Source: Gracilinanus agilis (lineage: Eukaryota). From it: 64,000 bases of DNA. The stretch spans positions 82,631,194-82,695,193 of the forward strand of contig NC_058132.1 of the NCBI RefSeq assembly GCF_016433145.1, read 5' to 3'. Shown in pieces: positions 5,302 to 19,829 of the stretch. Made by a program: the position numbers and the translations under genes. Position 1 is the first letter of the stretch. Every line of letters begins with the position of its first letter. Under the pieces are notes generated by a model. The model was not told the DNA's origin, ran no database searches, and was given only the letters and a program-made list of their open reading frames with translations.

Positions 5302-6091
5302 CTTCATTCTTGGTAGCTCCAGAAGCCCAGGGTTCTCTGTTGTAAATGAAGACTACCCAAGAGATGCTCAGACCAGGGTCAGGGGAAGATGTAGCTTCCA
5401 GAAGGGATGGTGCAGGGGCAGAGATAGGGGCAAAGGGGAAATGTTCACTAGACAAATGAGTCATAGGTTTAGAGATAATTGATTGTCACCCCTGCATTTC
5501 ATAGATGAGAAAACGGAAATCCACAGCGACTCACCCAGGGTTTCTGAGTTTGCATCCAAGTCCAGTGTGCTTGCCCCTTGGCCATGTTATCTTTTTCTTG
5601 TAAGGCCCTCTCTTGGGGGATAAGAGCAGGAGCCCGAGGCCTGCTGGGGAGGAGCTGCCTGATTCTGAAGAAAGAAAGAGCGCCTCCTGTTTACGAGTCA
5701 GGACCCATGGGGCTACGTGGATCCATGCAGAGTGCCTTCCCCCCAAGCCCAGAGTGTGCCTGACCTCTCCTCTCTTGGGGGGGGGGGATAGAGAGGTACT
5801 TGACTGGGATCTAGCGGCGGCCCTTCATGGATGCTGGCTGACTTGTTAACTTGCCAGGGACGTTTTGTCATTTTGTCTTCATGTAGCTAATGCCTAGCGA
5901 TGGGCAAGTCAGAATGGGGTGTCCAGCAAGCGCTGGTTCAGTGGATGGGTGTCATCGTGAGGATTCCTGCTCAGAGACGGCTGATGCTCTATGATTGGGC
6001 CATTGTGCCTCTGGACCCCGGGAGCTCAGCTCCAGCTCAGACTAGAGAGAGGGAAGGTTAGCCTCCCAGTGGCCAAGTGTAAGCTGACTCG

Positions 6092-15020: not shown

Positions 15021-15620
15021 AAGATGAGGGATTAGAGAAGGAGAGCTGGTCCTCTCATCAGGATCTCTGGCAACAAGCTCTCTGCTGCCCCTGCTGGGAG
15101 ATGAGCTGGGGTGAGGGCATGCTACTGCAGACTGGAAAACATCTGGAAAGAAGAGCCAGACTGCTCCCCCTCTAGGTCTGGTTGGCTCCTGGCCAGTTTT
15201 GAGGGAAAAAGATGTCTTCCAAATTGATTGCTTTGCCCTGGCTTTGAAGATACTGTGTATCAAGTGGGTGTGGCAGTGGGGAAGGGTCTCATCTCCCTTA
15301 CATAGAGGCAGCCAAGACAGAGAGGAAAGGACTTTCGATTTGGTATCAGAGGAGCCAGGTTTTTATCCTGGCTCTGCCACTCCCGGGCAAGTCACATCCC
15401 TCTGATGCACCTCAGTCTCTTCATTTGTCAAATGGAAAAAAGAAAAAAAAAAAAGACATACTACCTACTCCACAAAGGGACATTTATATGATTTGGAAGT
15501 TAATGTCTATAAACTTGGGGATTTCCCCCAGAGGACCTTTGTTTCCCTGAGTTGGAGCTCCCCCAGGTCTGGAATCAATTCTTCCCTCATTTTCCCCAGT
15601 GGCTATTGGCAGGGGGTCTA

Positions 15621-16652
<1,032 letters not shown>

Positions 16653-17793: not shown

Positions 17794-18090
<297 letters not shown>

Positions 18091-19006
18091 TCACCTCATG
18101 TATGGGGGCACCTCTCTAGGAGATGAAGTGAAAAATGTCAGTGATGGGGAGATTAAGTCCCTGGCCCAAGGTCATCTACAAAAGAGGGGTAAGGGGGAAG
18201 AGGAAGCTGGGGGGCAGATTCAAGCATTTTGCCCAAAAGCCTAGCAATCCTTCTTCCACTCCTTCTCTCTTTCCCCATGGCTTGACAGGGGGGCCTCTGG
18301 CCTAGAGAACCTCAAGACACCCCCAATACATATACACCTCAGACTTTCCCCCAAATGCTAACACGGAGGGGAGAAGAGGAAGGGTGGATATGGGAAGGAG
18401 TGGTGAAGACAAAACATTAGAGGATGGAAACATAGCTGATGCTTAATTATACATGCACTGGGAGAAAGGAGCAGCCACTGATGAAGAAGCCAAAAAGGAG
18501 AGCCCCTTCCCCAATCTCCTGGCAGCCTGCCTGATTGTATATTGGGGCAGGGAAATGCTGTGAAAGTCTTCAAATTTGCATTCAGCCCCCCAGCATTGGC
18601 TGGGAGGCAAGTAGAGTAGAGCCTGCGTGATACCTAGGACCCCACCCCCTCTTCAGTCCTGGGCTACCTTCTCCCCTTCTCCTTCTCCTTTCCACCCCCC
18701 CCCCCCACCCCCACCCCCCATTCCTGCTAGCAAGTGAGCAACAGCAGGATTAACCATTAAGGTTCACCTCCTCTGCCTTCCCACGCCAGCCAGCTTGCGG
18801 ATGCAGGTGTCATTGAGCAGAGAGCTGGCGAAGAGGTAGAGGGAGGAGAAGCCTGGAAGGACCACAAACTGTCCTGGTCCCACCGCCCCCCACCCCAAAA
18901 AAGAGATGATCTGCAAAGTGGATAATTGAAGATGGGCTGCTGGGTGGGGGTAAGGAGAGAAAGGGGGCGGGGGCCGTCGGGGATGGGGAGTCCCGGCGGT
19001 CGCCAC

Positions 19007-19310
19007 CTGTCTCGCCGAAGCCAGGTCACAACACGACACTGATGAAGTCACGACAGAGCAGCATGATGAAGCCACACTTCACGATGACCTGAGGTGATGT
19101 CACGAAGGAAGGCACGACGAGGTCACAGCAAGATCACGACATGGGACAACCCCAAAGATGGCATGACCAAAAAAAAATTAAGGCGGAAAGAAGAGAGGAC
19201 GGAAATGCGACGAGATGCTATCACGACCGGGCACGGTGATATCACGATATGAAGCTGTGATGTCGCGATATGACCCCCGAGATGTCACGACACAAGTCAG
19301 CGACTGCTCT
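19007..19310 (-). other. NCDN: NCDN upstream 5' UTR exon, homologous to the human exon encoding MSCCDLAAAGQ but non-coding here
   Basis: GTG TCG TGT TGT GAC CTG GCT TCG GCG AGA CAG|GTGGCG; 3' boundary by homology, 5' boundary uncertain. Confidence 0.7.
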
Positions 19311-19829
19311 GAGAGGTCCCTTCCAAGGATGCAGACGCGGGCCCAAAGTGGGGGGCTGTGCTCACCCGGGTGGGGCCGCGAACCAAGGAGACGTCCCCAA
19401 ACGAAATGCAGCCGGAGCCTTCACTGGTGCTCACACCGTGTTGCACACTCCGTGTTCCTGCTGCGGCAGCTCCACCCCCACCCCCGCATACATCCTGGCC
19501 AATCAGAGGCCGATTCACTCCTGTCCTTGACCAATGGCCTTTCAGAGCGTTGAGCAGTAGGGGACGCCCCCGCTCCCGCCATTTTCCTTGTGGGCACTGC
19601 CCCACTTTGCTCCCAACGGCTATTAAGAGGGGAAAGCGATGGCGGCAGCTATCTCGGAAGTGCAGGGAAAAAGTGGTTTCCCTCTCTTTGGCCCAGTATC
19701 GCTCTTTCTTGGGGTCTCGCTGCCCCTTCCCCACCCCCCTTATCCCATCCCCTCCTCCATCATGGACCTGGCACTCAAATTGCCCTTCCGGGGGGGGGGA
19801 GGTGGCAGAAAGAAAATTACTTCCGGGTG

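What the first reader, a model, noticed from the sequence alone, without database searches (positions are those of the whole stretch)
19026..19305. Unidirectional, roughly 21-bp-phased array of GTGATRTCACGA / TCGTGA motifs in the NCDN 5' leader
Seen: TCACGA occurs 7 times (19048, 19079, 19100, 19134, 19221, 19242, 19285), plus TCGCGA (19263) and two more CACGA (19032, 19113), all in one orientation (TCGTGA on the NCDN sense strand). Chance expectation is about 0.06 hexamers per strand in 260 bp. Four copies share a 12-mer, GTGATRTCACGA (19094, 19236, 19257, 19279), which fuses a TGAYRTCA palindrome to TCGTGA. Spacings of 31, 21, 21, 21 and 22 bp are close to whole helical turns. Established: TCGTGA/GTCGTGA is the NPAS4:ARNT/ARNT2 (neuronal activity-induced bHLH-PAS) site, TGAYRTCA is CREB/ATF-like, and every unit contains a CpG. 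Inference: a methylation-sensitive, helically phased homotypic module that makes neurochondrin activity-responsive and may direct the shared promoter toward NCDN. Alternatives are an RNA-level UCGUGA protein-binding array or a decayed 21-bp minisatellite.
Basis: partly seen in the sequence, partly recalled or inferred. Interest (0 to 1): 0.75.

Follow-up and report, generated by a model that had tools for sequence, protein, structure and literature searches.

The report
Conserved TCGYGA motif array in NCDN exon 1
A cluster of about ten same-direction TCG(T/C)GA motifs just downstream of the neurochondrin promoter is real and has kept its sequence and position in marsupials and placental mammals. 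It fits the ZBED1 (hDRE) DNA-binding consensus better than the proposed NPAS4 site, and it lies between two alternative splice donors.

Summary
Seven of the nine plus-strand TCACGA hexamers in the 64-kb window, plus one TCGCGA, lie at 19048-19290, and none is in the opposite orientation.

The window is from a marsupial. The same array, unit for unit, is present in Sarcophilus, dugong, a camelid, a bat, an otariid and a eutherian mRNA contig. It is absent from the lizard, turtle, duck and frog NCDN loci.

Between the two marsupials the array blocks are 89-95% identical. The core promoter is 72% identical and intron 1 is 47-66%.

The units read T(G/A)TCG(C/T)GA(C/T)A, which is the published hDRE consensus for ZBED1/hDREF. 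Eight of the nine matches with at most one mismatch in 64 kb fall in the array. Several conserved units are TCGCGA or TCGAGA in eutherians. These lack the CGTG core needed by NPAS4:ARNT.

Two spliced mRNA contigs show that the array lies between two conserved alternative 5' splice sites of exon 1. It is 5' leader in the long form and intron 1 in the short form.

No RNA structure signal was found.

Best reading (about 0.4): an ancient homotypic cluster of ZBED1-type sites with partly helical phasing. Binding was not tested, and an RNA-level role remains open. No read data could be laid.

The parts
19026..19305 (-). The whole array: about ten units with core TCG(C/T)GA on the NCDN sense (minus) strand, in a distal block (U1-U4) and a proximal block (U5-U10).
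   Evidence: Conserved unit by unit in 7 therian sequences.
19215..19305 (-). Distal block U1-U4. The hDRE-like 10-mers are at 19283-19292 (exact TGTCGTGACA), 19261-19270, 19240-19249 and 19219-19228, spaced 22, 21 and 21 bp.
   Evidence: 0-1 mismatch to TGTCGYGAYA. 89% identical to Sarcophilus. The eutherian copies show a 10-11 bp sub-period.
19150..19214 (-). T-rich, indel-rich linker between the two blocks. In eutherians it is a variable TA/T-rich tract.
   Evidence: 70% identity between the two marsupials, poorly alignable to eutherians.
19026..19149 (-). Proximal block U5-U10. The sense-strand cores correspond to + strand 19134-19139, 19112-19117 (TCGTGC), 19100-19105, 19079-19084, 19048-19053 and 19031-19036 (TCGTGT).
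   Evidence: 95% identical to Sarcophilus. Largely invariant across Theria.
19134..19142 (-). Two-codon upstream ORF ATG TCG TGA, formed by unit U5. It is the only upstream ATG shared by all seven therian leaders.
19037..19039 (-). GTG at the position of the eutherian isoform-1 start codon (MSCCDL). Unit U10 supplies this codon and the following Ser-Cys-Cys codons.
   Evidence: Sarcophilus also has GTG, with an in-frame stop two codons upstream.
19007..19009 (-). Downstream (weak) 5' splice site, CAG|GTGG. The long exon 1 ends at 19009.
   Evidence: The L006 mRNA contig uses the orthologous junction. The site is conserved in all loci.
19364..19366 (-). Upstream (strong) 5' splice site, G|GTGAGC. 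The short exon 1 ends at 19366.
   Evidence: The L011 mRNA contig joins the orthologous site to exon 2. GGTGAGC is invariant in all therian loci.
19366..19476 (-). Short exon 1. Its 5' limit is approximate and corresponds to the 5' end of mRNA contig L006. L011 starts further upstream.
   Evidence: 90% identical to Sarcophilus.
19499..19587 (.). Conserved core of the bidirectional NCDN/KIAA0319L promoter: two CCAAT boxes (19499-19503, 19531-19535) and a YY1-like GCCATTTT (19577-19587).
   Evidence: alignment A3. KIAA0319L lies head-to-head with NCDN in the orthologous loci.

Best explanation
The array is an ancient homotypic cluster of promoter-proximal protein-binding sites on double-stranded DNA, of the hDRE type recognised by ZBED1/hDREF. 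It is older than the marsupial-eutherian split and was not found in the sauropsid or frog loci sampled.

It probably arose by tandem duplication of a 21-bp unit made of two halves of about 10.5 bp. That origin would explain the single orientation. It has since been held in place by selection.

It lies 110-450 bp downstream of the NF-Y/YY1-type CpG-island promoter shared with KIAA0319L, in the segment between two alternative 5' splice sites of NCDN exon 1.

Inferred mechanism: a self-associating factor loads cooperatively on sites that share one face of the helix in the distal block. Loading needs unmethylated CpGs and modulates NCDN-directed transcription. One unit (U10) was co-opted in eutherians as the start codon and the Cys3/Cys4 codons of isoform 1.

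Shown here: the sequence, its conservation, its position and its fit to the consensus. Inferred only: which protein binds and what the effect is.
For: 1. Fit to the consensus: 8 of the 9 matches (at most one mismatch) to TGTCGYGAYA in 64 kb, both strands, lie in the 331-bp array, and two are exact. The consensus and the essential core TCG(C/T)GA are given in PMC7471704 and PMC6192621.

2. Evolution tolerates exactly the C/T swap that the consensus allows. U3 is TCGTGA in marsupials and TCGCGA in eutherians, and U2 is TCGTGA in the bat only.

3. The best units are DNA palindromes, such as TATCGCGATA in the camelid.

4. A 21-bp period with a 10-11 bp sub-period is seen in both lineages. ZBED1 self-associates through its hATC domain (PMC7471704).

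5. The array blocks are 89-95% identical between two marsupials, against 72% for the core promoter. Conservation peaks on the motif.

6. CpG observed/expected is 1.08 in the array, against 0.58 and 0.23 in the flanks.

7. Conservation persists in marsupials, which lack the isoform-1 ATG.

8. There is no RNA-structure signal.
Against: 1. No binding data of any kind. No paper in the library links NCDN with ZBED1.

2. All units point the same way on the transcribed strand. A palindromic DNA site does not require that, whereas an RNA element does.

3. Flanks beyond the 10-mer (..TCAYC) and some spacers are also conserved. With the T-rich linker and the 12-bp indel excluded, the motif-versus-spacer contrast is not significant (83% versus 72%, p=0.14).

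4. Spacing in the proximal block differs between marsupials and eutherians, so strict phasing is not conserved there.

5. Reported hDRE-like sites in ribosomal protein genes lie within 200 bp upstream of start sites (PMC7471704). These lie downstream.

6. ZBED1 is broadly expressed, whereas NCDN is neuron-specific (PMC12515174).

7. Eutherians keep only 5 exact cores. The divergent mRNA contig L006 keeps only 3.
Confidence: 0.4

Rival explanations
1. RNA-level element. In the pre-mRNA or the long 5' leader, the repeated UCGUGA-centred units bind a protein that sets the choice between the strong upstream and weak downstream 5' splice sites of exon 1. Alternatively, they control translation of the long leader, which carries the conserved AUG-UCG-UGA mini-uORF.
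For: 1. The array lies exactly between two conserved alternative donors, each used in a real spliced contig.

2. All units are on the sense strand.

3. The mini-uORF is the only upstream ATG shared by all seven leaders.

4. The conserved footprint per unit is about 15 nt, longer than the hDRE.

5. The downstream donor is weak (GTGGYG), so it would need enhancers.
Against: 1. No factor known to me binds UCGUGA.

2. YCAY (NOVA) is not enriched (z=0.5).

3. There is no stable or covarying RNA structure (z=-0.04, covariation term +0.16).

4. The 10.5/21-bp period and the palindromic cores have no obvious meaning in RNA.

5. Marsupials keep the array at 89-95% although they cannot encode isoform 1 from an ATG.
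Confidence: 0.25
2. One reading: an array of NPAS4:ARNT/ARNT2 response elements (TCGTG), some fused to CRE/AP-1-like octamers, makes NCDN activity-inducible.
For: 1. The NPAS4 element is TCGTG, and a synthetic activity-dependent promoter uses four tandem 24-bp modules carrying TCGTGACTCA (PMC5035142).

2. Units U7 (..CGTGACATCA) and U9 (TCGTGACTTCA) resemble that composite and are nearly invariant.

3. CGTG is enriched on the sense strand (z=4.9).

4. LTP induction is reported to raise neurochondrin expression (PMC12515174).
Against: 1. Conserved units U2 and U3 are TCGCGA and U4 is TCGAGA in eutherians, so they have no CGTG core. U7 is CCGTGA there.

2. The conserved 5' flank T(G/A) and 3' flank (C/T)A fit the hDRE, not a bHLH-PAS site.

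3. No paper in the library links NPAS4 and NCDN.
Confidence: 0.1
3. Sites for another CpG-reading DNA-binding factor, for example one that recognises the CGCG element (TCTCGCGAGA), or an unknown factor.
For: The TCGCGA cores of U2 and U3 contain CGCG and sit in a bidirectional CpG-island promoter, which is the context described for the CGCG element (PMC6192621).
Against: 1. Most units are TCGTGA, without CGCG.

2. The flanks are TA/TG..CA rather than TC..AG, which PMC6192621 treats as a separate element from the hDRE.
Confidence: 0.1
4. A functionless relic: an old 21-bp tandem repeat preserved passively inside a slowly evolving CpG island or exon.
For: 1. Lag-21 autocorrelation and unit-to-unit similarity show a duplication origin.

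2. The whole leader and promoter can be aligned between marsupials and eutherians at 62-70%.
Against: 1. The array blocks are more conserved than the core promoter and far more than intron 1.

2. Conservation is periodic and centred on the motif.

3. Hypermutable CpGs are retained at an observed/expected ratio of 1.08.

4. Unit number and position have been stable since before the marsupial-eutherian split.
Confidence: 0.07

Closest known systems
hDRE, the ZBED1/hDREF binding element (histone H1 and ribosomal protein gene promoters)
   Same: The 10-bp consensus TGTCG(C/T)GA(C/T)A with its essential core TCG(C/T)GA, a promoter-proximal CpG-island setting, and a factor that self-associates.
   Different: Described cases have one or a few sites upstream of the start site. 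Here there are 8-10 sites in one orientation, about 21 bp apart, downstream of the start site and between two splice donors of a neuron-specific gene. ZBED1 binding was not tested.
NPAS4 response element, and the synthetic PRAM promoter (four tandem 24-bp modules with TCGTGACTCA)
   Same: A TCGTG(A) core, a tandem modular layout of similar period, and an adjoining bZIP-like half-site in U7 and U9.
   Different: Conserved units with TCGCGA or TCGAGA lack the CGTG core. The natural flanks match the hDRE. The bZIP-like part is an 8-mer variant (TGACATCA, TGACTTCA), not TGANTCA.
CGCG element (TCTCGCGAGA) of TATA-less bidirectional CpG-island promoters
   Same: A central CGCG in two units, methyl-sensitivity expected from CpGs, and a bidirectional promoter context.
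   Different: The flanks differ and most units have TG in place of the second CG. The authors themselves separate this element from the hDRE.
Drosophila DRE/DREF and BEAF-32 site clusters at closely spaced or divergent genes
   Same: Clusters of short CG-centred sites near housekeeping-type promoters, read by a BED-finger protein. DREF and BEAF are suggested to compete for the same sites, which may affect chromatin boundary activity.
   Different: A different core (TATCGATA). ZBED1 is not a close phylogenetic relative of DREF (PMC3606216). No boundary function has been shown in mammals.

Membership tests
hDRE (ZBED1/hDREF binding element) | 10-bp consensus TGTCG(C/T)GA(C/T)A | tested here: met
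   The array has two exact matches and six one-mismatch matches. Only one other match with at most one mismatch occurs in the rest of the 64 kb. Orthologous units match in all therian loci.
hDRE (ZBED1/hDREF binding element) | Essential 6-bp core TCG(C/T)GA | tested here: met
   8 cores in the window, 7 in Sarcophilus and 5 in each genomic eutherian locus, all on the sense strand.
hDRE (ZBED1/hDREF binding element) | Occupied and regulated by ZBED1 | not testable with these tools
   No ChIP or binding data are available here. No paper links ZBED1 and NCDN.
hDRE (ZBED1/hDREF binding element) | Position close to the transcription start (within 200 bp upstream in ribosomal protein genes) | tested here: inconclusive
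   The array lies about 170-450 bp downstream of the 5' end of mRNA contig L006. Contig ends are not mapped start sites.
NPAS4 response element | TCGTG core (CGTG half-site for the ARNT partner) | tested here: inconclusive
   Present in 9 units of the window. The orthologous conserved units U2, U3 and U4 are TCGCGA or TCGAGA in eutherians.
NPAS4 response element | Activity-dependent NPAS4:ARNT2 occupancy | not testable with these tools
   No data are available. No paper links NPAS4 and NCDN.
Minisatellite / live tandem repeat | Recognisable head-to-tail units | tested here: inconclusive
   Tandem Repeats Finder finds nothing at score 30. Lag-21 autocorrelation has z of about 3.6-4. One three-copy 27-nt family, D1, is 67-70% identical, and two of its copies lie 21 bp apart.
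Minisatellite / live tandem repeat | Copy number and sequence vary between species | tested here: not met
   Units can be aligned one to one across seven therian sequences. The only sizeable difference is a 12-bp indel.
CGCG element (TCTCGCGAGA) | Consensus TCTCGCGAGA | tested here: not met
   The best units are TATCGCGACA, and most have no CGCG.
Regulatory upstream ORF | Upstream ATG with in-frame stop, conserved across species | tested here: met
   ATG TCG TGA is present in 7 of 7 leaders, and no other upstream ATG is shared by all.
Regulatory upstream ORF | Measurable effect on translation of the main ORF | not testable with these tools
   This needs reporter or ribosome-profiling data.
NOVA-type YCAY cluster | YCAY enriched over composition | tested here: not met
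   12 observed against 11.0 +/- 2.0 in dinucleotide shuffles.

The most novel reading that the evidence does not exclude
The array is a methylation-sensitive protein roadblock on DNA, placed between two competing 5' splice sites. When the phased sites are occupied by a self-associating, transposase-derived factor (ZBED1 type), elongation slows just past the strong upstream donor. This shifts the balance between the short exon 1 and the long exon 1. The short form gives isoform 2 only. The long form carries the mini-uORF leader and, in eutherians, the palmitoylated Cys3/Cys4 isoform 1, whose start codon is itself a unit of the array. A more remote variant is that the array is the exapted subterminal binding-site array of an old hAT transposon.
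Probability: 0.1. Interest if true: 0.75.

Novelty: new member of a known kind. Interest (0 to 1): 0.55.

Why it matters
Very few natural targets of ZBED1, a domesticated transposase, are characterised. A 280-bp platform that carries eight to ten consensus-like sites and has been conserved since before the marsupial-eutherian split would be a clean place to test several things:

- how ZBED1 binds
- whether CpG methylation blocks binding
- whether helical phasing matters

The array also lies between two splice donors that decide whether neurochondrin can be made with its palmitoylated N-terminus. It could therefore link promoter-proximal DNA binding to the choice of isoform in a gene involved in synaptic plasticity.

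The last unit supplies the eutherian start codon and the Cys3/Cys4 codons, while marsupials have GTG at that position. This makes the locus a possible example of coding sequence born from a regulatory repeat.

Tried and rejected
No start-site, splice or expression data exist for this genome.

2. Tandem Repeats Finder found no array.

3. RNA structure. The MFE z-score is -0.04, and RNAalifold gives a covariation term of +0.16 with only 4 compensatory pairs of 73. Rejected as a structured RNA.

4. A NOVA YCAY cluster is not enriched.

5. A REST/RE1 site to explain neuron specificity has no match with up to 3 mismatches.

6. The bacterial-type promoter and terminator scan is irrelevant to this genome and found nothing.

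7. A homologue of the array was sought upstream of NCDN in Lacerta, Lepidochelys, Anas and Ascaphus and not found. The Xenopus protein is not on record. Platypus is held only as a protein, so its DNA could not be fetched.

8. Literature. Nothing links NCDN with ZBED1 or NPAS4. The search for the extended SELEX-type ZBED1 motif returned only primer hits. PMC1820502 is not held.

9. Paralogy of U5-U5b with U10. MAFFT put the segments in a shifted register, so I claim only the shared ATGTCGTG / GTGTCGTG string.

10. Protein P0008 has an N-terminus that I recall as human-type. Before I recognised this, it had been one entry in a local blastp table. I did not fetch its contig or use it further. No contig that I take for human was fetched.

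Only the single large exon was used as a query.

Full report
**1. The observation**

The + strand of 19026-19305 carries TCACGA at 19048, 19079, 19100, 19134, 19221, 19242 and 19285, and TCGCGA at 19263. The whole window has only nine + strand and two - strand TCACGA. There is no TCGTGA on the + strand inside the region.

Against dinucleotide shuffles of the array itself, TCGYGA on the NCDN sense strand scores z = 14.5. Two of the four 'identical 12-mers' carry one mismatch each.

Tandem Repeats Finder reports nothing. The lag-21 autocorrelation is 0.367 against 0.266 +/- 0.028 in shuffles, and values are similar in the orthologues.

**2. Gene context and species**

NCDN runs on the minus strand. 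Its large exon is 15618-16652. The translation of that exon is 97.6% identical to Sarcophilus neurochondrin and 92.5-94% identical to the named full-length eutherian proteins. The window is therefore marsupial but not Sarcophilus.

There is no read evidence for this genome, and I worked beside those places from then on.

**3. Orthologous loci**

Using named non-human neurochondrin proteins, I fetched eleven loci:

- Sarcophilus (L001)
- dugong (L002)
- a camelid (L003)
- Rhinolophus (L004)
- an otariid (L005)
- Lacerta (L007)
- Lepidochelys (L008)
- Anas (L009)
- Ascaphus (L010)
- two spliced Logan mRNA contigs (L006, L011)

The array is present in every therian sequence and can be aligned unit by unit. 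Nothing similar lies within 10 kb upstream of NCDN in the lizard, turtle, duck or frog. In the turtle and the duck the whole NCDN-KIAA0319L intergenic region was covered. The array therefore predates the marsupial-eutherian split. On this sampling it looks like a mammalian innovation, although monotremes could not be checked.

**4. Strength and shape of conservation**

Identity between the window and Sarcophilus, by segment:

| Segment | Identity |
|---|---|
| Distal block | 89% |
| Proximal block | 95% |
| T-rich linker | 70% |
| Core promoter | 72% |
| Intron 1 | 47-66% |

Identity between the marsupial and eutherian consensus sequences:

| Columns | Identity |
|---|---|
| Hexamer columns | 83% |
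| All other array columns (Fisher p = 0.001) | 58% |
| Other columns, without the linker and a 12-bp indel (p = 0.14) | 72% |

When the hexamer mask is slid along the alignment, identity peaks at 0.88 two bases upstream of the core. It falls to 0.46-0.50 seven to ten bases upstream. Each unit therefore has a conserved footprint of about 15 bp, followed by a short drifting spacer.

The unit consensus is ..CC.T(G/A)TCG(T/C)GA(C/T).TCA(C/T)C. CpG observed/expected is 1.08 in the array at 52% G+C. It is 0.58 in the segment just upstream (upstream leader and promoter) and 0.23 in intron 1.

**5. What the units look like**

The published ZBED1/hDREF site (hDRE) is TGTCG(C/T)GA(C/T)A, and its core TCG(C/T)GA is essential (PMC7471704; PMC6192621).

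In the window, nine 10-mers on both strands match this consensus with at most one mismatch. Eight of them lie in the array and two are exact. The orthologous units match in the other species too.

The changes seen between lineages are those the consensus tolerates. U3 is TCGTGA in marsupials and TCGCGA in eutherians. U2 is TCGTGA only in the bat. Several units are true DNA palindromes.

The NPAS4 element is TCGTG (PMC5035142), which fits the TCGTGA units. It cannot fit the conserved TCGCGA and TCGAGA units, and it does not explain the flanks.

Units U7 and U9 do resemble the NPAS4/AP-1 composite of the synthetic PRAM promoter. The NPAS4 reading therefore remains a minor rival.

**6. Phasing**

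In the distal block the cores are 21-22 bp apart in all species. In eutherians, weaker TCG(C/T)G copies fill the half-period, giving spacings of 11, 10, 11 and 10.

In the proximal block the spacings are 22, 12, 21, 31 and 17 in the window, but 11, 11, 19, 29 and 17 in eutherians. Whole-turn spacing is conserved in one block only. I take it as suggestive and not as proof of a helical constraint.

**7. Position in the transcript (new here)**

Contig L006 is a eutherian isoform-1 mRNA. It runs colinearly with genomic DNA for 437 nt upstream of the MSCCDL start codon and splices at CAG|GTGG to exon 2. In that form the whole array is 5' leader.

Contig L011 has a protein identical to hamster isoform 2. 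It joins an upstream donor..CCTG|GTGAGC, directly to exon 2 and skips the array.

Both donors are conserved in all therian loci. In the window the short exon 1 ends at 19366 and the long one at 19009. The array fills most of the interval between them.

The upstream donor is strong and the downstream one is weak. Which form marsupials use is unknown.

**8. Coding and upstream ORFs**

The last unit, U10, reads ATG TCG TGT TGT GAC in eutherians. This is the start of isoform 1, with the palmitoylated Cys3/Cys4 (PMC12515174). Both marsupials have GTG there. In-frame stops lie upstream of that GTG, and no in-frame ATG lies between them.

Unit U5 forms ATG TCG TGA, the only upstream ATG shared by all seven leaders.

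**9. RNA-level tests**

The sense RNA folds no better than shuffles (z = -0.04). The alignment fold has a covariation term of +0.16. YCAY is not enriched.

An RNA-level role in donor choice or translation remains possible. The single orientation and the location favour it, but no reader protein can be named.

**10. Verdict**

The best-supported reading is a homotypic cluster of ZBED1-type sites on DNA (about 0.4). An RNA-level splice or translation element comes next (0.25). NPAS4 (0.1), another CpG-reading factor (0.1) and a passive relic (0.07) follow.

The protein that binds and its effect are inferred and were not shown here.

No paper in the library describes this array or links NCDN to either factor. 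I file it as a new member of a known kind, the homotypic binding-site cluster, with an unusual position between splice donors.

- No stretch of N was filled.
- No contig that I take for human was fetched.
- Places 17930-17971 were left out of all later searches.

Noticed in passing
window 19364-19366 and 19007-19009 (minus strand): NCDN exon 1 has two therian-conserved alternative 5' splice sites. Using the upstream one removes the array and the isoform-1 start from the mRNA.
   Followed up: partly
window 19037-19039 (minus strand); L001 about 8993: Both marsupials have GTG where eutherians have the ATG of the palmitoylated MSCCDL N-terminus. The 11 following codons differ between the two marsupials only by non-synonymous changes (L/R, S/A), so there is no sign of coding constraint.
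   Followed up: partly
window 19499-19587: The shared NCDN/KIAA0319L promoter keeps two CCAAT boxes and a YY1-like GCCATTTT at the same positions in marsupials and eutherians (alignment A3).
   Followed up: partly
L002-L006, linker between the two array blocks (for example L002 about 5850-5900): In eutherians the linker is a variable TA/T-rich tract (TATATA-like, expanded in L006). In marsupials it is a T run with no TATA-like sequence. Whether it acts as an internal TATA element was not examined.
   Followed up: no
L006 positions 208-400: The divergent eutherian mRNA contig has lost several exact cores (U3 is CCGCGA, and U9 is split by a 2-bp insertion). This suggests relaxed constraint on some units in that lineage.
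   Followed up: no
window 18692-18720: A long C-rich tract (about 25 C with interruptions) lies in NCDN intron 1, about 300 bp downstream of the long exon 1.
   Followed up: no
L008 8440-8640: The turtle intergenic region holds a long, near-perfect inverted repeat that looks like a transposon. It accounts for the two isolated TCGCGA hits there and is unrelated to the mammalian array.
   Followed up: no
L001 24805-27757; L009 19511-24032: A TF_AP-2 family gene lies just downstream of NCDN in both Sarcophilus and duck, so synteny on that side is old.
   Followed up: no
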